The notes below the pieces were generated by a model. That model was given only the letters and a program-made list of their open reading frames with translations. It was not told the origin of the DNA and searched no databases. A stretch of DNA of 64,000 nt from Orbicella franksi. Taxonomy: Eukaryota. Each line of letters starts with the position of its first letter. Position 1 is the stretch's first letter. Positions 5,438-63,825 of the stretch are shown here, piece by piece. Position numbers and translations under genes: made by a program. The stretch is from NCBI GenBank assembly GCA_964199315.1, contig OZ116699.1, forward strand, positions 37,200,001-37,264,000. Reading direction: 5' to 3'.

Positions 5438-8400
5438 CTATGGATGACAATAAAAATTCATTTTAAATATTATACGCGTTTAATTATGTCCAAAGTCTCT
5501 GTTAAATTCCCAACAGCATTTTTGTTAATGATCAACTTCAGATGAAACGACGCGCTTTCAAAATGTTTTTGCACTCTGCTGTTGTATTTTGTACAGTTTT
5601 CTTTTTATTCTTATTCGGCGCGAAATTAGACAACTTCAAGCAACTTACATGGTATACCAGGCGACTTTGTTGGGTATGTTCTTGAAATCTCGATAGTTGT
5701 TGCACCAGGTGTCTTCCCTGGATTGGAAGAGGTGATGATCGGACGAAAGAAAAAAACATAAAATGAAAAATCACAACCTGTTCAATCAATTATTAAGTTA
5801 CAAATCAAAAATCGTTACGTACGTACCTACGTTAAAATGCCAATCGATGAGTGTTTCAAAAATATGTGTTGAGTAGCACGAGGCAGCCAAGGACAAAACA
5901 AAGGTCATTCTAGTTTTTGAACATTCATATTGTTGGAAGCAGGCCAATCAAATCAGACGTCACTAATGACCCCATCATTGTGCTGGTAGGTAAAGTCTGC
6001 ATGCGAGCCAAGTGGCCCATCAGGCCGGAGCTTATCCCGGTTTCTGTAGCATGAAGCGACTAGGAGTATTTCTACTCCCCCCTGGATGGGATGCTAGTCC
6101 ATCGCAGGGTTACCCTCAGCATTAAGTTCGCCGGTACCCGTTTATACACCTGGGTGGAGAGAGGCACCGTGAGAGTAAAGTGTCTTGCCCAAGAACACAA
6201 CACAATGTCCCCGGCCAGGGCTCGAACCCGGACCGCTCGATCCGGAGACGGGCGCACTAACCATGAGGCCACCGCGCCTCCCACATCATTGTGCTGACAA
6301 AGTATTATTAACTTCGATGAGACCGTAGCTTTGATTAAAGTTTAACGAACCTTTTTGCTCACTTACGTTTCGTTACGGGAATTGTACCCTTGCTGGTAGG
6401 AGACGTGTTTGTGGTTTGCGTAGATATCGTTGGCTGCGTTGGTCTCGTGGAAACAGAACTTGGAGAAGCGTTCCTTATTGTGGTTCCGGGAGTAGCTTTG
6501 GTAACTGACAGAAAATAACGTTTGGCAAAGTTGTAAAGGCATAATAAAAAAATCATTGTGACGATTAATGCTGAATTACTTATTTACTTACTTAGGGGAG
6601 CAGGGATGGAGCAGTGGTGAGAGCGCTCGCCTCCCATCAGTGTGTCCCGGATGAGATTCCCGGACCCGGCGTCATTTGTGGGTTGAGTTTGTTGTTGGTA
6701 TTCTACTGTGCTCCGAGAGGTTTTTCTCGGGGTACTCCGGTTTTCCCCTCTCCACAAAAACCAACATTTTCAAATTCCAATTCGATCCTGGAATGCTCGG
6801 GCATTTCTGAACGAGTTCTTGTGAACTAGTTGGTGCTCCATGGGTAAACAAATTACATATTTACAATTATTTTATCTTATTTTTACGTTTTGTTACTGGG
6901 CCAGTCGCTTTGTTGCTAGGCAGCGAGTTTGAAGTCCTTGTAGTTACTGCAGGGCGCATTGGCCTAGTAGCAACAGAGCTTCGAGATGTGCTTTTTGCAG
7001 TGGATCTTGAAGCCGCTTTAGTAACTAGTAAGATGTACAACGAAGTTCCAATGATAAACAGCCAGGCACGTTTTATTGAAAAAAATAAGCGTCGACCTAA
7101 TTATATTCTTGCTTACCTTTTACCGTTTTGGGGACAGTAGCTTTGCTACTAGGCAACGGTTTTTTGGTCCGTATGGTCACTGCAGGGCGCGTTGGTTTCG
7201 TGGCGACAGAACTGGGAGAGGCGCTCTTTGAAGTGGTACCGGGGGTCCCCTTAGTAGCTAAAAAAAATGACGCACATATCTACAGCTTAGTTCTGAAGAC
7301 TTTAATTGGCTTAGCGTCAACCTAAGCAGTATTTTGTCCACGTCTCGATCTTGTTTGATTACCTTTCGGCTGGACCCCTTGCTGCTAAGCGACGAGTTTG
7401 TGATCTGTATAGTTCATGCGAAAAGCGTTGCTTTTGCAGCAACAGAACTTGCAGAAACCATTATTGCAGTGGTACTGAGAGAAGCTCTCGTGACTTATTT
7501 AGAAACAAGAGCTTTATTATAAATAGCATCCTTAAGTAGGGTTATAAATGAATTAAGCGTCCATTAATTATTTCCTCACTTGCCTTTTGTTACTGGAATT
7601 GTAGCCTTGCTGCTAGGTAACCAACCCGTAGTCTTCTTAGTTTCTACAGGATTTGTTGGTCTCGTAGCCACAGAATTTGGAGAAGTGATTTTTGTCTTAG
7701 TCTTGGGCGTCGTTTTGGTTGCTATATAGTAAAGTAACAATTTATCATTATCATTTGGTGTTAATTAAAAATTAAATGAGGTATTTCAGTTTCTCTTTAC
7801 GCTTTGTTAATGGAATCGTAGCTTTACTGCAAGGCAGCCGGCTTGATGTCCGTTTCGTCTTTGGTTTTGTTGCAACAGACCGCGGTTAAGAGGGGTTCGT
7901 CCCAGCCGTGTGGCGTGTGGTTTTTGTGATTGATAATAAAACGACAAAGAAAACCCAAATACGTCACACGACAGTGACGCAATTATAAAGCAATACGTAT
8001 TCATCTTTCTAATATCTGTTTGAATACAATAATAATTTATAGATCAATTTTATGGTATTTCATATCTATGGGTTATAAAACAATGCCGTAGTTCGGAACT
8101 ATTGTAAGTTAAGTATCTTCCAATCCAATAGATTGGAGAAGCCATTTGGATCACTGATCGGTGTCGGTCGTTTTATAGGATCAACCTATTTTGTTTGCAG
8201 CATAAGAGGATGATTTTCTCTTGTTCATGGCTGGCTCATAGTTCTATATTTTATACTTACCCGTTGGTCTTTGGGTCGGCTTAGTAGCTGGTTTCTTTGT
8301 ACTGGGCAGACCCTTCCCAGGGTTCAAAGTCCTTCTTGTGGATGGTAACCTGGTCGGCCTTGCTGGTCGTTTTGTCCCTAAAGATGCAGGTTTTACTTTT

Positions 8401-41199: not shown

Positions 41200-41611
41200 G
41201 GTTCTGGTGTTGTATTGTATGGTCTTCTGCGTGAAAAATTCACCAGTGATCTGTGTGATCAGTGGCGTGTATATTAGCAGCCTGGAAGTCAAAACAAGGA
41301 CAATCTCTGAAACGAATCAAAGTCACCTTCTTGACTCCTCCAGTGAGGTTGCTAATAACTCTTTCTTATTACCTTTTGGTGATACGAATTTAATTTGGGA
41401 CGGGATATAAAATGCTTGAAAAAATTATCAATCGATTCCGCGATGTTCTAAATATTTGCTAAAGCGGTTCAATATTTGGTCTTTGCATAATAGATTTTCA
41501 CGCCGATCAAGCAATGATCTATGATACTGAGATTCCATAAGCTGTTACTTTTCGCGACCTTTCTGGGGAGGATTTAGAACGTGACATAATAATCCAACTC
41601 AGCACATTAGT

Positions 41612-42495
41612 CCTAAAGCCCTGGCCAAACGGACTCGCAAGAAGAAGCAAGTTGAAAACCTGGGTCTACTTGCGACTCCGTTTGGCCAGGACTTGCGTGC
41701 ACTTGCATTGACCTGCGATGACTTGCGCTCACTTTGGTCGAGATCAAATTTGCACGCAAGTCACTGACGCAAGTTTTTCACCGTTTGGACACCCAACCCA
41801 AGACAACGCAAGTTGAGTAACGCCCATTAAGCCCTGGCCAAACGAGGGCTCTACGCAAAGTTCAACGTAAACAGACTCTACGCAAGTTCAACTTGCGGCT
41901 ACTTGTCATTACTTGCGAGTACGTCTGGCCAGGACTTAAAAACCCATTTCAAGTCAGAAATATCTTGTGTTTCATTGGCTAGTAATAGGTTAATGGACGT
42001 CTTTCAACTTGCGTTGGCCTGGGTTGAGTGGCCAAACGGTGAAAAACTTGCTTCGACCTGCGTGCAAATTTGATCGCGACCAAAGTGAGCCCAAGTCGCG
42101 CAATTCAAAGCAAGTGCACGCAAAGATTGGCCACACGCAGGCTCGCAAGTAGACCCAAGTTTTCAACTTACGTCTACTTGGGAGTCCGTTTGACCAGGGT
42201 TGAACGCGTGTAATTTTTTTGCGTATTTTATTAGGTGAAAAGAGGCGAAAGCGAGACGAGTGCGAAGCGCGAGTTGCGCGCGAGGGGAACAGCGTAAAAC
42301 AAATAACGCGTGATGTCAGGAGCCATAATCGGGTCCCCGACTATGGATGTTTTTTCGCGCTCTTCCCCTCGCGCTCGCCTCGCGCTCGCCTCCGCTTCCT
42401 AAAACACGCAAAAGAATTACGCCTATTCTGCAGGCTACAAGTCTCTATGCAAGTTCAACTTGTGGTTACTTGCGATCCCGTTTGGCCAGGGCTAA
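41612..42495. mobile_element. Cluster of nested or rearranged MITEs
   Basis: Repeated AAGCCCTGGCCAAACG and its reverse complement CCGTTTGGCCAGGG at about 41615, 41680, 41830, 41925, 42185 and 42478. Confidence 0.65.
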
Positions 42496-43029
42496 GTGAT
42501 CACCATGCCATGCTCGGGGAAACAATAAACCATGGTCGCCAGTTCCTTAGGCAAGCCAAGAGCGATAGCCGCAGCAACAGATCTAGACAATTTCGAAAAC
42601 CGGGGGTAAATTTATTTTTTGACTAGGTGATGTACTTACCAGTCCGTCACGAAACGGAGCTTTTCGACCGAAGGAATTTGAAAATGTCGGCTTTGAGGCA
42701 TTGATCCCCTGATAAAAACACTGCATTCCACGAGACTGTTTTCAAAGATGTTTTTCTTGGTTTATGGTGGAACAAGGCACGAAAAACTTGTAAGTATCAA
42801 TCGGTTTTACTTAACTTTCTCATCTTTTGTATTTTGGTTTTCCATTTTGCTTTATTCAGCGGATTCTGTATTACGGTTTCAGTGAATCGCTCGTTCGTGT
42901 AATAAAGGTTAAAGTTCAGCGAATCTCAAATATTTCTCCTTGTTGCCGCCTTTTGGTAGTGAACATTGGGTTCCTACAGCACGCATAAGGACAATTTCCG
43001 CATGTTTCGTCTTTCGTTCATAATTCAAA

Positions 43030-43121
43030 GGGGATTTCCCCGTGGGGTCAGTTCCTGGGGACTCTCCCCAGGGACCTTCCCCCTACAGCTGAAACCGAAA
43101 GGTACGACTGCGTTTCGTTTC
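43030..43121 (+). promoter_or_regulatory. Three NF-kB-type sites plus ISRE/IRF motifs immediately upstream of ApoL-like gene 1
   Basis: GGGGATTTCCCC (43030-43041), GGGGACTCTCCCC (43057-43069), GGGACCTTCC (43071-43080), GAAACCGAAAG (43091-43101), TTTCGTTTC (43113-43121); ATG at 43189. Confidence 0.6.
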
Positions 43122-43188
43122 AGTGGAGCCATGATACACGAGTTCTCGAGGTGCTAAACTGTGTATCTAGGCTACGCTTTCAGTTGCA

Positions 43189-46100
43189 ATGTCGGCATTC
43201 CTGTACACTTTGTTGTGGTTAATCTTTGGACTCCCAGTAATGGTAGTGATCGCATTCTACGTCTTTAGAAATCGTATCTTCGTCGAAGGTTAGTGGGCAT
43301 CAAACTGTTATATGTAAAGCTTAAACTTAAGTTTCATTTAGTATTCAAAAAATTATTCTCCAAAGAGAATGAACTAAATAATGTTGCTTAACAACGAAAG
43401 TAGCGGATCGAAACATTTATGTTACTATCCACAATATGAACTGGGTGTTTTGTCAGCTTCAGCAATATTATGTCTGTATTTGCAGTTCACGTTTCAAAAC
43501 ACTTTTGTACTCGAATCACCTCCCCTTCAAGTGGAAGTGGAAAAACCCGTTCACTGCAAAGTATGTCACTTTTAAGGTCGGTGTAAAGATACAGCAACTC
43601 CATTTCTCTCTTAGCTAGCTCACGCTGTTGTACATGTTTGAACAAAAGGCGTACTGACCTTTCGCACTTATGATCAGAGCCTCAGGGGTTTGGGGGAACA
43701 AGGGAACATGGTCCTTTGTTTCAAGGGAACAAAGGATAATTATTTTGGGGATTAATTTGAGGGAACAACGGATTTATGCTGGTTATTGTTGATGTAAAAA
43801 GCTTGTTTTGTCCCCCATACTGTGTTGTGATATTTCAGGGGTTTTACATGAAGAGCCAACCAGTTTCATTCGTAATGACATACAAAAAAAATGAACACTT
43901 ATCATTCCAGAGGTGAATATAAGAATTGGACATTCTGATTGGTCGAAAAGCGCAGCATATAACGCTATATTCACTCCCCTAGTGCTTGGTTACTAAGCTC
44001 ATAACCTTTGCCCATCTCGGGAAGTAAACATGGCCGACAGATTCTGAATGAAATTTTCATTTATGCAAAAGACATCTTCCCAAGTCCAGGATATTTGAAA
44101 GGATGGAGACTTTTCAACTTGCATTGACTGCTGTCACCCTTGGACCCACAATCTTTTCAAGAACTCGTATTCAAGGCATTCAAGAATTATAAACACAGTG
44201 GTTATTTTGATTGCCAGGAGGTCAGATCAGTTGACCAAAATTTATTTTTCTTCAAACTAAAGCTACTCGTTTTTAGATGATGATGACAATTGTGAATGAA
44301 GTTAACAACGGTAAAACAAAGGTACTGGATGAATTTATTTTTCGTAGTGTTTCGCTCGTTCGTTTTACTGCTGAACTCAATAGGTAAATTAATTCACAAT
44401 TGATGTACATGTAAGCTTATTATTAAACTACGGCTGCATATGCATCTGTGTTTTTATGTTTTAGTGCTTTATTTTGCAGTCTTTGATATTCATCTCTGAA
44501 AATTATACTGAAACAATTATTCGCCTCAGGCTCAGTGAACATTGGTGAATATTCACCAATGTTCACTTCGCCTTTGGCCAATAATCGTTAAATATTTCCC
44601 TATCTTGCCTTATATGACTGAGAACAATACAGGAAAGCTGCTTTATCTTCTATACTTGGCAATGATTCACACAGCGTAAGGTCCGCGATGTTAAACTTCA
44701 AGTACCCTTGCAAGATTGTGAATGTTAGTTCAAATAAAATCAGCCTTTTTGGGTCACACAACTATTTAACTGCATATGTTTGGGACAGTTCATGCAAAAC
44801 CCGCTGATACTTCACAGGAATTTTGAAGAAATAGTAACACGCTCAATATTGTGGTTGTTTTTTATGTCAGGTCTGCAACAGATATTTTTTGCCCTATTTC
44901 GCTTGTAGGAATCAGTCAACTGGAAAAATTGTATAGCCCAGTTAACATGTCAGTACGCACAAACATGTTCATAAATGGAAAACTGGACAACTCCCTTTTA
45001 TCCTTTGTCTGTGCTAAATTAGTTTCAAAATTGAATCTGAATGTAACAACTCTGCAACTGTGGAATTGCCCTTCAACGTGTCTTTCTTTCATTTGTGGTT
45101 TCCAGTCTCCAGTTTTCAGATTCCGGATTCCAGTTTCCAGATTCTGTGTTTTAGGGTTGCCCACTTTAAAAAATGGAAGTCATAAAAATATTGTAGCTAT
45201 AGTGGGTATCAGCAAACACTGATAAAATTTAATGTTATCATTGAAAGCCACAAAAATATGCAACTTCTATCATTTACAATATCACCAAAGTATCTCTACA
45301 TCTGTAAGGCCAGTAATGTTTCTTTCCATTTTAAACGTTAAATTATGATTTGAAATCAAACTAGATTGTTTAATTTTCTCAAATATTTCTGAAGTTTTAC
45401 TATGAGCCAATTACTCGGGTAAAAGTTCTCAGTTCTAAATTCAATTACCCCACTACATTTAGTAGCTTCCATCAAATTGCTAGCAGAATATTCCCCAGAA
45501 TGTGATCTCTTTGAGCTATCAAAGATTCACGAATGAATGTCTCCAGAATTCTTTTGTTAGATATTTTCAATTTCAATGAAGAGTGACTTCTAAATGGTGC
45601 TTTGTGTTACTTTTATAAGATTTAATCTTGTTTTCTTGGTATATCAAGTCTGAACTTATGGTGAATATGCTATTTATTTTTCTATATGTTTATTAAAATT
45701 CTAATATGGCTCCAAGGCTTACTCTGATGACTAAAAATTGATTTTGAGGTTTGAATAAACAATTTCTTCTGTTTTAGTCCCTCCAGGTGTAAACCTGGGG
45801 GCAATTTTAGAATTTTAATCATTGTGAGAGACCCAGTGGCAGTGATTACGGTTGAGGCACAATGAACTTGAAGTAAACCCTGCAGAAATTTAGTGGTGAA
45901 AGTTTTCAAGATTGACTAGAGGAGCCCCTCAGAACTTCACACCATTTCCAAACAACTGTGAATGCTGGCTGACAGGTGATCAAGCAGAAAAAACCTTTGT
46001 ATTTTTGTGCCCAATCGGCAAACAGTATCTATATGGAGTCACTTTTGTGTGTTCCTCCATGGCTATTTGTGTCAGCCATAACTTCCTTTTTGCATTCTCA

Positions 46101-49100
46101 CAATGAAAACTTTCATTTTAATTTACTTCAGAGCCAAAAGCCAAAACAAGTCAGGTCATTGTGGATGTCAGCAAGAAAGATAATCCTAGATCCACCAGGA
46201 AATTGTTTGCTTTGAGCAATCAAGGGTATTGCAAATACTGACTTGTTTATCAGCAAGTTGATTTTAGCTTTGTCCAATCATGATTTTGATTTTATTGAGT
46301 GCAATTTTTCTACACAACGTGCATAATTTATTTGATGTGTGGCTTATAGCAAAGTCAACCGAGTATTCAACCAAAACCATCCAGTGAAAACTGTATACAT
46401 AGTGATGCTTGTAAAACGACAATCTGTGTTACTCAACCCTTAAGACGCTGCCAAAAATATAGTCTGCACTTACATGTAACTCCCTTTTCTATAGCATGAA
46501 AAGACTACGTAGGACTACATATTTCCCACCGGATGGGATTTTTACAAAGGGTGACACCCGGTATTTTATATGTAACATATCAACAAAGAAATGTGAAATT
46601 TAATAATTGTAATGTTGATCTGAACAGTAAATATTGCACTTTGCATCTGTCATTGTGAAGAAAAAGTTTAAAAAAAGTTTAAAATATGACCATAGTTCTT
46701 TATGTGCCAGATAACATCTTTGAGATTATTCTTTGTGTAGACACTTAACTCTGTCACTAAAATACAGCAGGTTTAATCAAGCTACTAGAGCTGAAAATGG
46801 TTAGTGAATGTTCATCATGAAACAACCAATAGATACTTTTGAAGGGTTATTTTCAGTTGCTGGCAGAATCATGCCTGTGAAGCAATCCCAGGAGAAACTG
46901 ATGGAGGGACTTCATTTCACAGTGAGGTCTGAAACTCCACCTGCCAGAGAGAAAGCAACCCCAAATCATGGGGGGTACTCCCTATAATGGTCTATACAGT
47001 GAGCTCCACCCAAAACGGTTACCTTTTTCAGGCTTCAGGTATATAAAAGGGAAGAGATTTCACGAGTTGAGGTACATGACATGGAAATCTCTCATTTTAT
47101 TAAATCATTTTAAAGGTGCTTAAATTAAAATATTTCCAACAGACACACATTATGGCTGTACCATTTCATTTATTAGGTACTACATGAAAGTGACTAGAAG
47201 ACTTGCTTTTTTGGCAATTTATTCATAATATGGGCCAGTTATGAAAGTATGTGAAAGGGGTAGCTTCTTTCAATTAAAGGTATACAAAAGGGGTATTTTT
47301 TCTGTCAATTATTATACAAAAGTGTAAGGGGTTGGACCTCAGGGCGGAGCCTGCCCATATAGAACTTTGCAGAGTATCCTGCCCCCTGACCCCAAAATAA
47401 TTAAGTCACCAACAAAATGATATATTTGTAGATGTGGTAGCTTGTCCAAAATTATGAAATACAGGCATTTTCCTCTAATGTGGACACCAAAGAGATGGAG
47501 CTTAGTGTCTGTTGTGGAGGTGTTTGAATTAGAGGTAGAGACATGAGTTCTGGTTTCTGTTGGACCAAGTACATTAGGGGTGGGCCGGTCAACAGGTGCA
47601 TTGGATCTGGTAAAGTTCACAAATTCTACCTTACATCAAATAATAAAATTAAATTAAATTGGCTATTGCCAACAGGTGGTGAACTAGTTGTTTAGAGGTG
47701 AACAACCCAATGACAAATAAGCCCAGCAAGTCAAACAACTCATCTTTTCCTGCTAAAAAAAATTGTAGAAATTATCAGAAGTCTTGTGGTCTGATATTTG
47801 ATGCACATTTATTTTACTTTGAATTAAATTTATACTAGCTAATTAGGGTGCATTGCAGATCATTGCATGTTAACTTGGTGATTCAGGCTTGAAAGATGTT
47901 TCTATCTTGAATTTGTTGTTATTTAACAAGTTGACGTCAGTTTTTTATGCATCTGTCCTCTTGTTGATGATAAATTGCATCATAACATTGTCAAAGTGGC
48001 CATGGAACCACGAGCCGCAGGCAAGTGGTTCCACTGTAAACTTTGACAATGTTATGATGAAATTTATCATCAATAAGAGGACAGACGCATATAAAAATGA
48101 CATCAATTTGTTTTTTACAATAACAAGACCCCAAAATGGTCAAATGCAGGGAATAAATGAGGGGGAAAGATGCTGCAGACTTGCCATAAACAAAGATAAG
48201 TGAATTTTATTCAAAATTACACGTGCATTGTCAATAGCTTTTCTTGCTTTTTGATTGGCTACTTTAAAAAGTCCCTAAAAATTTCATTTGTTAAAAAGTT
48301 GATAGTTTGACAGCTGAAAGTTGAACTTGAAAGCTTGCCTAAATTATGATTTTATCCGTCTGTACTCTTGTTGATGATAAAAATGAGCCAATCAGCATGC
48401 GAGAAATTAGACAGTTATTGTAAAAACTGTGTTTGCCCCTGGAGTCAATCAATTTCTTATGAAAGTACAAGAATATGTTATGATAGAAAGGCACTCAGTT
48501 GTACGTAATGGCAAATATAATTATACATTGTACATGGTTTTATGTATCTGTCTGAGCAATTTCGCGAAAACATGCCTACCTAAGGCTCTTTCTTGGACTC
48601 AGGGGGCTCAGGAGCCCAGCTGACCACCTTAAATGTAGGGGAGCTTCTGTTAAGGCCCAAAAGAGGAGATGGTCAAGGGAGCAGTCCAAAACGGGGGGGA
48701 GGGTGTCTTCTTGTAACACACACAGGCATTCACTTCAAGCTATTGATGTAACTTTTCATTGCTAAATATCATTAATTTTGACTGTTTCGCTGGGCACTTT
48801 ACCCAGTTGTGAAACGCTGTTTGAGGAATCTATGCTGAGACAGTACACTGCTTACTAGAGGAACCTGTCCTGTTGATGGATGACAGGCCAATCTCCTCCC
48901 AGTGGGGTGGTCAAGGAACTTGAGGTCTTAAGTTCTTGCAGGCATGTTTTATAAAATACAGTCAGCTATATGTGCCTTGAGAGGTTTCTATCTACTTCGC
49001 TCAGCCAGCCGCTTACTTTGAATGGAACAGAGAAGAAAAAAATTGAACGAAAAAATGTTTCTAAAGTTATGCATGCAGACATCTCGTCTTAAAATTTACA

Positions 49101-51268
49101 ATGTTGTCAATGTTATATAAATTTCGTAACGACACGAAATCGTTTTGATTGCTACAATTATCGCTTCTGATAGTAATACTACTTCACAAAACGTCATCAT
49201 TAGTCTTGGATGACTGAAATTCTGCCTTCAGAATATTGAGCTGATGTGATATTTGGCTTTTTCTGGAACTTAGCTCGATTACCATGCAGCCGCTGTTCGA
49301 GAAAGGAGCCCGCGCTCCTCCTTGCGTGAGCGGCGGAAAGTGATTGTGATCCCGGTAAAACAGAATAGAAATAATAGGCATTGTTGAGCAGAATATTAGC
49401 AATGTATAATAATATTAAAAACCAGATGCCTAGGTGTGGATGCAGTATGCCAAAGTGACCGATAAACAAGCCACTATCTACGATGCCCGCGGCTTTGATC
49501 GTTGAAACGAAACTTTTCCCAGCGAATCATAGTACAGGTATCTTTCTTGCTGACACGCGAGATGATTTCCCTCGTTTTCATCGCTCTAAAATAAGTTACA
49601 AAAAGGAAAATTAAAATAATATTTCTGCCGTAGGAACGAAACTGCAATGGCCGTGTAAAGAATTCGCTTATTGGGAAGAATAGTACAAATAATTTTTCTG
49701 CCAGCATTCGCAGAGCGAAATGGCCGGAAGAGATTCAGTTGTCAGGGGCTCTCCCAGCCATTCATGAAAACTTTTACTGCTACAATTTGTTACCAGGTGC
49801 ACTTCGTTCTGCCCGAACATACTGCTCCTAGCTCTCCGAGGATGAATTAATTGGCCCGTTAACAGACAATGGAGTCTTGAAAATTCTTTTTGTCATTTTA
49901 GAATTTTGAGATAAAAAAGGTTGGTTATATACAAGGGGACATAAGGAGTGGTCGATTTAGTGGAAGAATTTCTTTTCTAGGGTTTTTCCGAACTTTGTTT
50001 CAGTTTCTTGTTTCTATCTTTGTTTTTTCAAGAATTTATTTGGATGGTGAACTGCTTACAGTTAATTTCAGGAGATCCTGCCTTACACGCTTTCCCCCTC
50101 ACTTCCTTGATTTCTAATGATCTAACCCTAAGCATGTCTAGTGGGCGTATGTGTTTGTTGTTGTTTGGCCGTTTATGAATATTTTAATTTGTGTCTAATA
50201 TTAGGGGACGAGGATGGAGAGGATATCGTCGATCAGGCCGAAATGGAACGAATGGTACAAGAAGTCAATGCCGTCGCAGAGAATGTCCAGGAAATGAACG
50301 TTGCGGTAGAAAGTACGATTAAAAATCTACGTTCCACCGCTGATTATCTCGACCAGGTGTGGAAAGATTCCAAAATTGCCTCTGCTGCTGGAAATGGTGC
50401 TGGAATCTTAGGCGGCTTGCTGACGGTGGGTGGAGGATTTGCCACAGTCATGACAGCTGGTGTAGCTGCACCTTTGTTAATGGCGGGAACAGCAATTGGA
50501 GCGGCCGGAGCTTGCACAAGCCTTGGTGCAAATATTGTAGAAGCCTGTATCAATTCTTCTCTTATCCGGGAGGCAGATGGTGCCGTGGAAAATGCTAACC
50601 GTGCAATAAATAACGTTAGGGAAAAAATTCGCCTGTTGAAAAATGGTAAAAGTCAGTTTCGATTGGTGTTTCTTGCCGGTCTTGCTGCCAGAATGCTTGG
50701 TCCAAACCATCTGGCTGTTACCTTTATACAGAGTCTTCTTCGTCCTGATCTGCGTTCCAAAGTTCTTTCTGAAGCTGGAACGCGAGGCGTTTCTCAACTA
50801 GCATTGAGACTTGGTGTGACAGGGGCCACAACTACAGCAACTAGAGGAATCGTTGAAACCGGATCCAGAGAGGTTCTTAACATCGGCGTGACCACGGGTG
50901 TCAGAAGAGCTGGAAAAACTGGAGCTGTGACTGTTCAGAAAATTAGTAAGCGGATAACAACCAGAGTGTCCAAGAAAGTGGGAACAAAAGCTGGAACTAG
51001 AGCGCTTAGTAAAGCTGGTTCGAAGACAGCGTCTAATGCTGGCAACGTTGCTGTGAAAGAGGGATCCAATGCTGTGGGAAAAGTCGGTACAAAGGTTGGA
51101 GCCAAGGTAGCGGGCGAAATCATTATGGGAGTGAGTGCAGCGTTTCTAATCCTTGATGCCCTGGAGCTGACTTTCACTGTCAGAGATATAGTCAACAACA
51201 AAGGTTCAGATGCGGCCCAATGCCTTAGAGATAAGGCAGATGAATTGGAGGAACAATTGCGTGTGTAA
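43189..51268 (+). CDS. Apolipoprotein-L-like protein 1 (about 387 aa) with an N-terminal hydrophobic anchor exon
   Basis: Exon 43189-43288 (MSAFLYTLLWLIFGLPVMVVIAFYVFRNRIFVE, phase-1 donor G|GTTAGT) joins in frame to exon 50205-51268 (LRSTADYLDQVWKDSKIASAAG..GILGGLLTVGGG..TAGVAAPLLMAGTAIGAAG..VSAAFLILDALEL..LRDKADELE), an ApoL-family pattern. The ApoL exon is secure; the join across 6.9 kb is inferred. Confidence 0.8.
47920..48115. mobile_element. Hairpin-type dispersed repeat
   Basis: Arms ..CTGTCCTCTTGTTGATGATAAATTGCATCATAACATTGTCAAAGT / ACTTTGACAATGTTATGATGAAATTTATCATCAATAAGAGGACAG.. Confidence 0.7.
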
Positions 51269-54238: not shown

Positions 54239-54251
54239 AGTTTCAGTTTCC
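54239..54251 (-). promoter_or_regulatory. Consensus ISRE upstream of E2-like 1
   Basis: AGTTTCAGTTTCC, about 85-100 bp 5' of the ATG at 54153. Confidence 0.5.
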
Positions 54252-54723
54252 GTCACAAAATCTTAGCTTTTAGAAGATGATTCATACAATTCAGGTTTCC
54301 GGTAGAGAGGCGATTAATGGTCTTTAAAAGACACATTTTACCTTCTCCCTCCCCAGTTGCCGGTGTGCGTCTAAAGATAACAATTTAATTGTGTCTAATT
54401 TATTTTCGTAATGGAAACCAGTGGCGGATCTTACTTTGGGTAAAAAAGGGAAAAATCACAGAAGGGAGAAAAGCCGGCTGGGCAAGCAAAACAAAGCCAT
54501 CACGCCCTTTCTAACCCCCCCGCCGCCCCCAGCTCAAGGTCTGGATCCGACCAAGACCTCTGCTGTCTTCAGCAAAAGAGGAGGGTTCTGCGGTCGAGAA
54601 TGAAAAAAAAAAGTCTGTATTGATTTGAAAGGTTATTGTTTACGAAGATCTTTGAAAACCAAAACTGAAACCTCCACGTCCATGAAGGCAGTACGGAATC
54701 GTTATTTGTTTTGTTTTGTTTTG

Positions 54724-61514: not shown

Positions 61515-63825
61515 ACCCAGAGGACAATCGCAACATTTAAAATTGGATGACAAAGTAGCGAAATGATCTGTGAAACTTTCACCTGGTTGGAACAGTTAGA
61601 AATTGCTTGGCATACCGTATAATATTATCATTCTGTAATATCCAGGAAAGCAGTTGTTTAGTTTTATTAGGTTATAAGCTTTGTAAAAGGCTTAGAAAAG
61701 TGCGGTTGTATTTCTGTATCACTACTGTTCTATGCACTTTCAGTCCCATGTTAATTAATATGGTACAAAGAATTGAAAGTTCCTGCTTTTCTTGGAAACA
61801 CCATCTGAGACCCAGTTGATATATCGCATCAAAGTAAACACGAAATAGAGTAAATTTCTTTTATCCCTTTGAAACGTTTACTGAGACTATGTACGATGAA
61901 TAAAATCCATTAACTGTCTCAAAAAGGCTCGGATTTGCAGAGAAATGGCGAAAAAAAAGGGTGGTATTTCAGACGAAGTAATATTACAATGGCATGCAGG
62001 GGAGTGGAGTTGGGGCCGGGGACGCTTTAGTGATCAAATTTAAAATGACTACCGATGGTAAAACGTTAGACATTATTACGGCCAACTCTAGCCCTCGTGT
62101 GACGGGAAAGCCCTAACCAAGTATTTTACTTCCCTACAAGACGAAATAGATAGTATCAGAATTGATACATAGCCCACCCACCCCCTCCCCTCTCCCCAAC
62201 CGGGAAAGTTTCGTCCAAATGAAAGACCTAAATTCAGAAAATAAAAATAAATGTCTGGATCAAACTCGAATATCGTATTGTTGTTTGCGTATCGATAGGT
62301 TTTTTACATCCTTCCTAGGTTTTATATCTTTATACAAGAACAACAGTCTGATAAGCAGACTGGGAAACTTCGAGCACGTGTGCTAAATTTTTGTAAATAT
62401 TAGTCCGAACAGATTGAGAAAAATCAAAAGAATAGGCCACTTTCGATATATTAAAATTCAGCTAGATAATGAGGTTTAGAGGACACAAACAAAATATATG
62501 AATAAACATGTCGTTAAATTTCCTTTGTTTTTGTCCCCTAGGCCTTACTGCCAAGCTGAATTTTAATATATCGAAAACAGTATATTGTCACATTTTTTTA
62601 GTGTAAATTTCCCAGAAAGATCGCGGCTTCGTTAAGATCAACTTGCGTATGCATCGTTGTCTAAGAAATGCGATGTTCATAAAAAGTGCTTTAGAAAATA
62701 GCAGAAGTCAATTTTTCTGTGACAAATAAAATTCATCATTAATATCAGAAAACTGTCACGCCGTAGTCAAAAGCGGAAAGCATTAAGCAATCCATGATTG
62801 CATGCGAAGGCATTGGTGTTTCAAGATTTCAATTCATCGCTTTGTATCGGTAGACCAGTATACGTACCTGGAGGAAAGGCCATGTTTGACTGTTGGTGAA
62901 AGCATTTCTCGCCCGGATAATTTTATTTTTCAGCTTTTTCTCAATGAAAGTGTTGTGAGTGGAATAACACACCAGCCGCAGTATAGTATACCCTGAATTT
63001 CAGTCGTGAGTCATCGCCTCAGTATTTCGTCAATGATTATTTTATCCTGCATCAAAACGCAGAAAGATGAATATTTTAATGTTACATATAAGATTTTTCT
63101 TCGGTTCTTCTATGAATGCCGTCGCTCGGGGCAAAAGTTTCTTTCTATAATATAACTAGAGTATCAGGAAGAAAACTTGATTTGACCTGAAAAAAATTCA
63201 ATTTCTGTTACACAGTTGACCTCCTATTTCACAGGTTAATCTGTTTCACGCAAACTGTTGACCGTAACTATATGTATCCAAGTCTCTTTTAATCCCGATC
63301 TTCAAAATAATTAAGCTAACAGCAGAGGAGAGGTCTTTTTACGATGAGGTAATGCAGACGACACATGGTTTCCGAGAATAAGCTTTCGGGGAAGTCCCTA
63401 AATTTGCCCTGACATGTGCCGAATATGTGCTGTCACTGTGCTGTGTCTCTGCATAAATAAGTAGGGGTTTCCCAGTCTGAATTCCAAGAATCTACACTTT
63501 CTTAAGACACACTTTTCTATTTCTGTCGTGTGTATCGACAGGATCTGACTTAGGTCACGTGCTTTCCGAGAATGAAAGGCCTAAATTTTGCCTTGACGAG
63601 AGCTGAATATTTTAAGTGCTAACCAATGACATGTTTCCGCATAACAATTAGGGGGTTCCCCCTTCTGAATTCCGAGAATCGACATTTCAAGGAAACGCTT
63701 AGGTTGCATTTCTGTCCTGTGTATCGACAGGATTGAGCTTCAATTTGTGAGTCTTCTCTATATACAGAATAATAAGGCAACCAAAAGTACATTGAATCAA
63801 AATCTTTATAAAACGAAATTCGATT

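What the first reader, a model, noticed from the sequence alone, without database searches (positions are those of the whole stretch)
43030..43121. Compact enhanceosome-like element: three kB sites and two IRF sites in 92 bp
Seen: GGGGATTTCCCC, GGGGACTCTCCCC, GGGACCTTCC, GAAACCGAAAG and TTTCGTTTC packed 70-160 bp upstream of the ApoL1 ATG, as a GC-rich island in AT-rich DNA and not inside a repeat I recognise. Established: adjacent NF-kB and IRF sites define vertebrate IFN-beta/chemokine-type promoters. Inference: an ancient NF-kB/IRF composite promoter in an animal lineage that lacks interferon.
Basis: partly seen in the sequence, partly recalled or inferred. Interest (0 to 1): 0.7.

Follow-up and report, generated by a model that had tools for sequence, protein, structure and literature searches.

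The report
Coral ApoL promoter with NF-kB sites
A single-copy stretch just upstream of the start of a coral apolipoprotein-L-like gene carries three NF-kB-type sites and a few IRF-type sites that are partly kept in other corals, so it is probably an ordinary immune-type promoter, not an interferon-style enhanceosome.

Summary
The stretch is single-copy in the 497-Mb genome and is not a tandem repeat. Eleven spliced transcript contigs show that the exon starting at 43189 joins the ApoL-domain exon at 50205. Seven of them start at 43167/8, so the element lies about -45 to -135 from the likely start site: it is the proximal promoter of an Orbicella ApoL-like gene (the O. faveolata LOC110045069 model sits in its 90% cluster).

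The three kB words have the same G3-4...C4-6 form as sites shown to bind sea-anemone NF-kB. At least one strict kB word survives in every Orbicella-type copy compared. A distant coral whose introns no longer align keeps two kB words, the IRF-type words on either side and a core word, CTGTGTATC.

The IRF part is weak here. Only GAAACCGAAA is canonical, and it is lost in three closer relatives, including an expressed haplotype. There is no ATF/AP-1 site and spacing is not fixed, so "enhanceosome" does not fit. No kB or IRF-core word was found in the Acropora digitifera homologue.

Binding and inducibility are untested. Verdict: a plausible NF-kB (perhaps also IRF) responsive promoter, a new member of a known kind, of moderate interest.

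The parts
43004..43019 (-). GAAA-repeat (GTTTCGTCTTTCGTTC on +).
   Evidence: It aligns to the canonical core GAAAGCGAAA in L016 and GAAAACGAAA in L052, in the same place 12-14 bp 5' of the first kB word. It is changed in L134 and lost in L002.
43030..43041 (.). kB1, GGGGATTTCCCC
   Evidence: Identical in L134 and L002. L016/L052 have GGGGGCATTTCCC. One half-site is lost in L014.
43044..43055 (+). Degenerate fourth unit GGGGTCAGTTCC. It does not fit GGGRNNYYCC.
   Evidence: With the other three words it makes four 13-14 bp G-run...C-run units in a row, which hints at origin by local duplication. TRF does not call it.
43057..43069 (+). kB2, GGGGACTCTCCCC
   Evidence: L002 has GGGGACTTTCC and L014 has GGGGACTTCCCC. 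It is broken in L134 (CGGG-CTCTCCCC).
43071..43083 (+). kB3, GGGACCTTCCCCC
   Evidence: Kept in L134 and L002. L014 has AGGACCTTCCCC.
43065..43074 (.). TCCCCAGGGA, a perfect COE/EBF-type palindrome formed by the junction of kB2 and kB3 (the rival reading).
43091..43101 (+). GAAACCGAAAG, the only canonical IRF-E/ISRE core in the element.
   Evidence: Its homologue in L016 is AGCTGAAAACCGAAAC. It is lost in L134 (GAGGCCGAAAG), L002 and L014.
43113..43121 (-). TTTCGTTTC (GAAACGAAA on the minus strand). The spacing is non-canonical. It forms an inverted repeat with the 43089-43101 word.
   Evidence: Intact in L134, one base deleted in L002, absent in L014 and L016.
43159..43167 (+). CTGTGTATC, a conserved core-promoter word. 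The inferred main start site is about 43165.
   Evidence: Seven transcript contigs start at 43167/8. The word occurs 3 times in the window against 0.34 expected, always in sense 5' of a gene. At 54971-54963(-) it lies about 25 nt after a TATAAAAA box. It is kept in L002, L016 and L052.
43189..43288 (+). Coding part of exon 1 (ATG, hydrophobic N-terminal helix). The GT donor is at 43289.
   Evidence: Orthologous exon 1 is found in L002, L014 and L016, and an equivalent exon in A. digitifera.
50205..51268 (+). Exon 2: the ApoL domain (PF05461) and the stop codon.
   Evidence: Pfam E = 1e-14. The 43288-to-50205 splice is present in 11 transcript contigs and in protein P0067, the O. faveolata model XP_020606320.1.

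Best explanation
The stretch 43000-43170 is the TATA-less proximal promoter of an apolipoprotein-L-domain gene. The gene has exon 1 at 43189-43288 and exon 2 at 50205-51268. The O. faveolata model LOC110045069 sits in the same 90% protein cluster.

Three p50-type kB words lie about -135 to -82 from the inferred start site near 43165. I infer that the coral's single NF-kB protein binds them and raises transcription of this putative membrane-active effector on immune stimulation. This is the same way three kB sites drive the Nematostella TRAF3 promoter.

GAAA-repeat, IRF-type words flank the kB cluster. They were canonical in the ancestor shared with a distant coral. In this lineage they are eroding, and only GAAACCGAAA remains canonical in this allele. 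IRF input is therefore possible but secondary.

The sites behave like a loose 'billboard' with turnover in copy number and spacing, not like a fixed enhanceosome.

Shown: the motifs, single-copy status, promoter position, the splice, partial conservation, and presence of the factor genes. Inferred: binding, inducibility and co-operation.
For: Motifs and rarity.

Single copy, no tandem repeat.

Gene and splice. Transcript 5' ends fall at 43167/8 (seven contigs), 43187, 43117/8 (two contigs, plus one raw read starting at 43119), 43089 and 42879-82.

Form of the sites: the kB words resemble the three Nematostella TRAF3 sites that bind Nv-NF-kB in gel shifts and are needed for reporter activation (GGGAAAGCCCCC, GGGAAACCCCCC, GGGGAACTCCCC; PMC10329013). 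NF-kB site preference is reported as highly similar among Capsaspora, sponge, Nematostella and Exaiptasia NF-kBs (PMC13042239).

Conservation: L002 keeps three kB words, L134 keeps two and L014 keeps one strict word. For L016, with 70% ApoL identity, blastn aligns only the exons. A 41-column block covering the IRF-type word and kB1 still aligns with local score 18. Shuffles gave mean 8.3, sd 1.1, and 0 of 1000 reached 18. A second block covers GAAACCGAAA and a third covers CTGTGTATC.

Factors present: one RHD gene and eight IRF domains.

Locus context: GAAACTGAAA occurs 5 times in the window against 0.41 expected.
Against: No binding, chromatin or induction data exist for this gene. No paper in the library mentions it.

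Against close relatives the kB cluster is no better conserved than the intron: 0.94/0.94/0.79 against 0.95/0.89/0.77. The IRF core is worse, at 0.82/0.73/0.45.

The L134 haplotype or sister species lacks kB2 and the IRF core, yet it is the allele of transcripts L003-L009. Those two sites are therefore not needed for expression as such.

Some transcript ends lie inside or upstream of the element (43117, 43089, 42879), so the start site is not sharply defined. Raw reads were too few to settle it: two reads.

A triple kB cluster somewhere in 497 Mb is expected by chance.

The A. digitifera homologue shows no such words.

IRF knock-downs had no measurable effect on cGAMP-induced genes in Nematostella (PMC8713801).
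Confidence: 0.55

Rival explanations
1. It is a real promoter, but the G-run/C-run words are read by another factor. The junctions between adjacent units form CCCNNGGG palindromes of the COE/EBF type, or they could act as generic G/C boxes. The kB resemblance would then be a by-product.
For: There is a perfect TCCCCAGGGA at 43065-43074 and a CCCGTGGG at 43039. L016 also has TCCCGGGGGC between its two units.
Against: L014 keeps GGGGACTTCCCC, but its two flanking palindromes are lost. kB1 is conserved as a G4-N4-C4 unit on its own in three of the four other copies. Substitutions in kB2 fall in the central bases and spare the G and C runs in L002 and L014.
Confidence: 0.15
2. The motif cluster is a chance or neutrally drifting product of local duplication inside a promoter and has no regulatory role of its own.
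For: About five non-repetitive triple clusters exist genome-wide, roughly the chance number. Conservation against close relatives is at the neutral level. Four 13-14 bp units in a row suggest slippage or duplication. An allele without kB2 and the IRF core is expressed.
Against: The cluster sits within 140 bp of the start site of a gene whose vertebrate relatives are interferon- and TNF-induced (my own knowledge). The kB and IRF-type blocks survive in L016/L052, where the introns are unalignable. The word types match experimentally bound cnidarian sites.
Confidence: 0.2
3. The stretch acts as RNA: a structured 5' leader of the longer transcripts that start at 42879-43089.
For: RNA fold of 43020-43130 gives -51.4 kcal/mol, z = -4.7. 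Contig L010 carries the whole element. The AA>GG change in L134 would keep G-U pairs.
Against: The fold follows from palindromic kB words and the inverted IRF-type repeat, which are also what dimeric DNA-binding proteins prefer. Most transcript contigs start downstream of the element. The only Rfam match is far below threshold (mir-939, 27 against 84 bits). Insertions of 24-90 bp in relatives break the helices.
Confidence: 0.03
4. It is part of a transposable element or other dispersed repeat that happens to carry kB-like words.
For: Upstream DNA at 41700-42800 holds inverted repeats and pieces with raised contig depth.
Against: The 201-bp query 42990-43190 matches only itself in the genome. 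Synteny with L002 starts exactly at 43000 and runs through the gene.
Confidence: 0.02

Closest known systems
Nematostella vectensis TRAF3 promoter (three NF-kB sites; PMC10329013)
   Same: It is a cnidarian immune-related gene with three kB words of G3-4...C4-6 form near the start site. There, Nv-NF-kB binds all three, and reporter activation needs them.
   Different: Those sites are spread over about 1000 bp; here they sit within 54 bp. No IRF-type words are described there. Here nothing has been tested at the bench.
Vertebrate MHC class I 'enhancer A + ISRE' module and similar kB+ISRE promoters such as CXCL10 (my own knowledge, not checked here)
   Same: p50-type kB words (H-2K type GGGGATTCCCC) sit next to an ISRE about 100-200 bp upstream of the start site. 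The layout is loose, and input from NF-kB and IRF is additive.
   Different: It is a different gene in a different phylum. Here the ISRE part is degenerate and polymorphic, and there is no interferon/JAK-STAT loop.
IFN-beta enhanceosome (PRDIV-III-I-II)
   Same: IRF-type GAAA repeats lie beside a kB site.
   Different: The enhanceosome has an ATF-2/c-Jun site, four tightly overlapping IRF sites and one kB site, with invariant spacing over about 55 bp. Here there is no ATF/AP-1 word, there are three kB words, the IRF spacing is irregular, and insertions are tolerated between the parts.
Human APOL1/APOL3/APOL6 genes (my own knowledge: induced by interferon and TNF through IRF, STAT and NF-kB)
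   Same: The product has the same protein domain (PF05461), and the predicted classes of regulator are the same.
   Different: Orthology of the regulatory DNA is not shown and is unlikely. The likeness may be convergent.

Membership tests
NF-kB-responsive promoter (kB-site cluster) | One or more matches to GGGRNNYYCC | tested here: met
   Three non-overlapping loci in 54 bp. 0 of 300 shuffles of the window gave three in 60 bp.
NF-kB-responsive promoter (kB-site cluster) | Lies in the promoter or enhancer of a transcribed gene | tested here: met
   Eleven spliced transcript contigs. Seven start at 43167/8, which is 44-138 bp 3' of the words.
NF-kB-responsive promoter (kB-site cluster) | The organism has an NF-kB protein | tested here: met
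   One RHD gene on C10. O. faveolata NF-kB is described in the literature (PMC13042239).
NF-kB-responsive promoter (kB-site cluster) | Sites kept in orthologous promoters | tested here: met
   Strict kB words kept: L002 3/3, L134 2/3, L014 1/3. L016 and L052 have two each. Against close relatives, identity is not above the intron level.
NF-kB-responsive promoter (kB-site cluster) | Bound by NF-kB, and NF-kB-dependent induction | not testable with these tools
   Needs EMSA/PBM, ChIP, a reporter assay, or challenge RNA-seq.
ISRE / IRF-E element | GAAANNGAAA core (two GAAA words 6 bp apart) | tested here: inconclusive
   Met by 43091-43100 only. 43113-43121 has a 1-nt spacer. 43004-43019 has 3-nt and 1-nt spacers.
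ISRE / IRF-E element | Kept in orthologous promoters | tested here: inconclusive
   Lost in L134, L002 and L014. Canonical cores stand at the homologous places in L016 and L052.
ISRE / IRF-E element | IRF proteins present and binding | not testable with these tools
   Eight IRF DNA-binding domains are in the genome. Binding was not tested.
IFN-beta-type enhanceosome | ATF-2/c-Jun, IRF and NF-kB sites that abut one another | tested here: not met
   No AP-1, CRE or ATF word in 42950-43200.
IFN-beta-type enhanceosome | Invariant spacing and near-perfect conservation of the whole unit | tested here: not met
   There are 24-30 bp insertions in L002 and L014 and about 90 bp in L016 between the kB and IRF parts. 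kB copy number varies from 1 to 3.
Dispersed repeat / transposable element | Many copies in the genome | tested here: not met
   Only the self-match in 497 Mb. No tandem array.

The most novel reading that the evidence does not exclude
ApoL-type membrane-active effector genes were already under joint NF-kB and IRF control in stony corals, as an 'interferon-stimulated-gene-like' promoter module working without interferon. The module is old enough to be shared by coral lineages whose introns no longer align, and it spreads by duplication: L016 and L052 carry a second copy next to the main ApoL exon. The deep, expressed haplotype that lacks kB2 and the IRF core would then be a natural regulatory variant of an immune gene.
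Probability: 0.15. Interest if true: 0.65.

Novelty: new member of a known kind. Interest (0 to 1): 0.4.

Why it matters
Very few direct NF-kB targets are known in cnidarians. Nematostella TRAF3 is the only one I found with bench evidence, and no IRF target has been shown.

This is a compact, single-copy, naturally polymorphic promoter in front of a likely pore-forming effector, in an endangered reef builder. Probes, reporters and allele-specific expression could all be applied to it at once, so it is a convenient test case.

It would also show whether the vertebrate habit of putting ApoL genes under inflammatory control has a counterpart in an animal without interferon. If it fails those tests, it is just one more motif cluster.

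Tried and rejected
- Raw RNA reads (the only read-laying run) gave two reads on exon 1, too few to fix the start site. Two of the three raw-read runs laid nothing.
- The 375-aa protein forms (P0001, P0071, P0072) looked like evidence for a start site inside the intron. Their contigs look like unspliced genomic DNA instead: all carry the same 849 nt of intron upstream.
- ApoL paralogs on C14 gave no recognisable exon 1, and no kB word and IRF core close together.
- Two other non-repetitive triple-kB loci (C7, C8) sit near a GPCR fragment and a 593-aa ORF without Pfam hits, which was not informative.
Only L134 is homologous.
- L015, L053 and the upstream part of L052 gave no exon 1 within 10 kb.
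- MAFFT alignments of L016 were unstable. Pairwise local alignment with shuffles was used instead.
- Rfam gave only a sub-threshold mir-939 match.
- Literature searches found nothing on this gene or on cnidarian ApoL regulation.
- Species names for L002, L014 and L016 could not be obtained. L016's species is not Oculina patagonica (78% identity).

Full report
**The observation.**
- GGGGATTTCCCC, 43030-43041
- GGGGACTCTCCCC, 43057-43069
- GGGACCTTCC, 43071-43080, running on as CCC to 43083
- GAAACCGAAAG, 43091-43101
- TTTCGTTTC, 43113-43121

The ATG at 43189 places the element 68-159 bp upstream. One is a further GAAA-repeat at 43004-43019 (GTTTCGTCTTTCGTTC). The other is a degenerate G4...CC unit at 43044-43055, which makes four 13-14 bp units in a row. 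The GC rise is modest: 0.47-0.51 against 0.30-0.41 nearby, and 41500-42600 is just as GC-rich.

**Chance.**
- GGGRNNYYCC matches 25 times in the window against 4.5 expected.
- No shuffle of the window out of 300 produced three kB loci within 60 bp.
- Across the whole 497-Mb genome, three same-strand kB words with gaps of 30 bp or less match 85 times against 53 for the reversed control. Almost all are minisatellites, and about five are non-repetitive, this one among them.

A cluster of this kind somewhere in the genome is therefore roughly what chance allows. The weight lies in where it sits and whether it is kept. The 201 bp around it match nothing else in the genome, and TRF finds no array. 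It is not a repeat.

**The gene.**
- The 375-aa ORF at 50141-51268 carries an ApoL domain (PF05461, E = 1e-14).
- Its 90% cluster includes O. faveolata LOC110045069.
- Isoform X2 and several transcript-derived proteins begin with residues encoded at 43240-43288.
- Eleven transcript contigs (L003-L013) align as 43xxx-43289 joined to 50203-51xxx.

This proves the splice from the GT at 43289 to the AG at 50204. Exon 1 from the ATG at 43189 encodes a hydrophobic N-terminal helix. The A. digitifera homologue has an equivalent first exon.

**The start site.**
- Seven contigs begin at 43167/8 and one at 43187.
- Two begin at 43117/8, one of them joined to an Illumina adapter.
- One adapter-joined contig begins at 43089 and one at 42879-82.
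- The raw reads gave only two reads, the first starting at 43119.

Immediately 5' of the common end lies CTGTGTATC (43159-43167). This word occurs three times in the window against 0.34 expected, each time in sense before a gene. At 54971-54963 on the minus strand it follows a TATAAAAA box by about 25 nt. It is conserved in L002, L016 and L052.

I infer a main start near 43165, with minor upstream starts. On that numbering:
- kB1-3 lie at -135 to -82.
- The canonical IRF core lies at -74 to -64.
- TTTCGTTTC lies at -52 to -44.
- The upstream GAAA-repeat lies at -161 to -146.

No TATA, AP-1 or CRE word is present.

**Conservation, near relatives.**

| Locus | ApoL identity | kB words | IRF words |
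|---|---|---|---|
| L134 (second Orbicella haplotype or sister species; DNA 94.7% identical) | not measured | kB1 and kB3 kept; kB2 lost | GAAACCGAAA core lost |
| L002 | 91% | all three kept; kB2 becomes GGGGACTTTCC | both lost |
| L014 | 84% | GGGGACTTCCCC kept, plus half of each of the others | none |

L134 is the allele of transcripts L003-L009. L002 also carries a 24-30 bp insertion after kB3.

Region by region, the kB cluster is 0.94/0.94/0.79 identical against 0.95/0.89/0.77 for the intron. The IRF core is 0.82/0.73/0.45. At this distance there is no signal of constraint for the IRF words and at most a slight one for the kB words.

**Conservation, far relative.** L016 has 70% ApoL identity and is not Oculina. 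Outside the exons, blastn aligns nothing co-linear with the window. Upstream of its exon 1 it has, in the same order:
- a canonical TTTCGCTTTCG;
- 12 bp later, GGGGGCATTTCCC and GGGGGCTTTCCC;
- further on, AGCTGAAAACCGAAAC;
- then CTGTGTATC.

The block from the IRF-type word through kB1 aligns to 43002-43040 with local score 18. Shuffles gave mean 8.3 and sd 1.1, and 0 of 1000 reached 18. The same module occurs again 500-700 bp before the main ApoL exon in L016 and in L052 from the same sample. The module has therefore been duplicated.

In 212 kb of coral DNA I counted 47 kB loci and 62 GAAANNGAAA loci. About two chance pairs within 60 bp are expected. Apart from the ApoL promoters there is one.

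The A. digitifera homologue has neither word type in its 400 bp. L015 and L053 gave no exon 1.

**Trans factors and precedent.**
- The genome has one Rel-homology gene and eight IRF DNA-binding domains.
- In Nematostella, three kB sites of the same form in the TRAF3 promoter bind Nv-NF-kB and are required for reporter activation (PMC10329013).
- NF-kB site preference is reported to be highly similar among Capsaspora, sponge and sea-anemone NF-kBs (PMC13042239).
- Promoters of poly(I:C)-induced Nematostella genes hold motifs of the STAT, IRF, NF-kB and ETS types (PMC8476169).
- Single IRF knock-downs had no measurable effect on cGAMP responses (PMC8713801).
- I found nothing on this gene or on ApoL regulation in cnidarians.

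**Reading.** The element is the proximal promoter of an ApoL-like gene, and this part is near certain. The most likely mechanism is NF-kB binding to a homotypic cluster of p50-type sites, giving inducible transcription. IRF-type sites were part of the ancestral module and are decaying in the Orbicella lineage. The layout is flexible, so 'enhanceosome' does not fit: there is no ATF site, spacing is not fixed and copy number varies. The nearest vertebrate analogue is a kB-plus-ISRE promoter such as MHC class I enhancer A/ISRE (my own knowledge), not IFN-beta.

**Rivals.**
- Another factor reads the CCCNNGGG junctions; there is a perfect COE/EBF-type TCCCCAGGGA at 43065.
- The cluster is neutral drift from a locally duplicated motif.
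- The stretch acts as a 5' leader hairpin (z = -4.7), which the palindromic words themselves explain.
- A transposable-element origin is excluded.

**Verdict.** This is a new member of a known kind, of moderate interest, with a cheap natural experiment available in the two expressed haplotypes.

Noticed in passing
43159-43167 (+), 54971-54963 (-), 63717-63725 (+); L002:3315, L052:9469 and 9479: CTGTGTATC occurs three times in the window against 0.34 expected, always in sense just 5' of a gene. Once it lies about 25 nt after a TATAAAAA box, and once it sits at the common 5' end of seven transcript contigs. It is a candidate initiator-type core-promoter word in these corals.
   Followed up: partly
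L016:9180-9440 and L052:9289-9480: In a distant coral the whole module (IRF core, two kB words, a second IRF-type word, CTGTGTATC) is present a second time, 500-700 bp before the main ApoL exon. In L016 this is in addition to the copy before exon 1. The promoter has been duplicated.
   Followed up: partly
L134:7333-7933 (minus strand) against window 42800-43400: A second Orbicella haplotype or sister species differs by 5.3% here. It lacks kB2 and the GAAACCGAAA core, and it is the allele seen in transcripts L003-L009 and in the NCBI model (Leu instead of Phe in exon 1). Runs labelled as several different organisms hold the window's own version in full. This may be an old polymorphism at an immune-type gene.
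   Followed up: partly
L002:3346-3444: Exon 1 of the closest other species has an in-frame TAG in place of TGG before Met18, plus a 3-nt deletion. The N-terminal hydrophobic helix may be lost there. The NCBI O. faveolata model also starts at Met18, although the upstream ATG is open in all transcripts seen.
   Followed up: no
54241-54254 (-); also 7784, 49998, 56471, 58393: GAAACTGAAA occurs five times in the window against 0.41 expected. The copy at 54241 is a full ISRE consensus (GGAAACTGAAACTG) about 90 bp before the ATG of the 147-aa RWD/E2-like ORF. Another lies about 160 bp before the ATG of the second ApoL gene (56638).
   Followed up: partly
63330-63730: A promoter piece of about 190 bp is duplicated in tandem. 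Each copy holds a kB-like word (GGGGTTTCCC, GGGGGTTCCCCC) followed by TCTGAATTCC. It lies 5' of a gene with a membrane-anchor first exon (ATG 63828) and calcium-binding-EGF-like repeats further on (L180:2235-3140).
   Followed up: partly
46972-47037: The alternative first exon of isoform X1 (MVYTVSSTQNGYLFQAS) lies where a kB-like word (GGGGTACTCC at 46972) recurs at 6729 in the window. This looks like exonisation of a dispersed repeat.
   Followed up: no
L016:5745-5835: An insertion of about 90 bp between the kB pair and the second IRF-type word is flanked by the direct repeat AGCTGAAAA, like a small transposon with a target-site duplication. A piece of it matches window 49269-49321 in reverse.
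   Followed up: no
L003:1-22, L010:1-20, L011:1-23: Logan transcript contigs begin with Illumina adapter sequence. The junctions mark real fragment ends, but they are not proof of a transcription start.
   Followed up: yes
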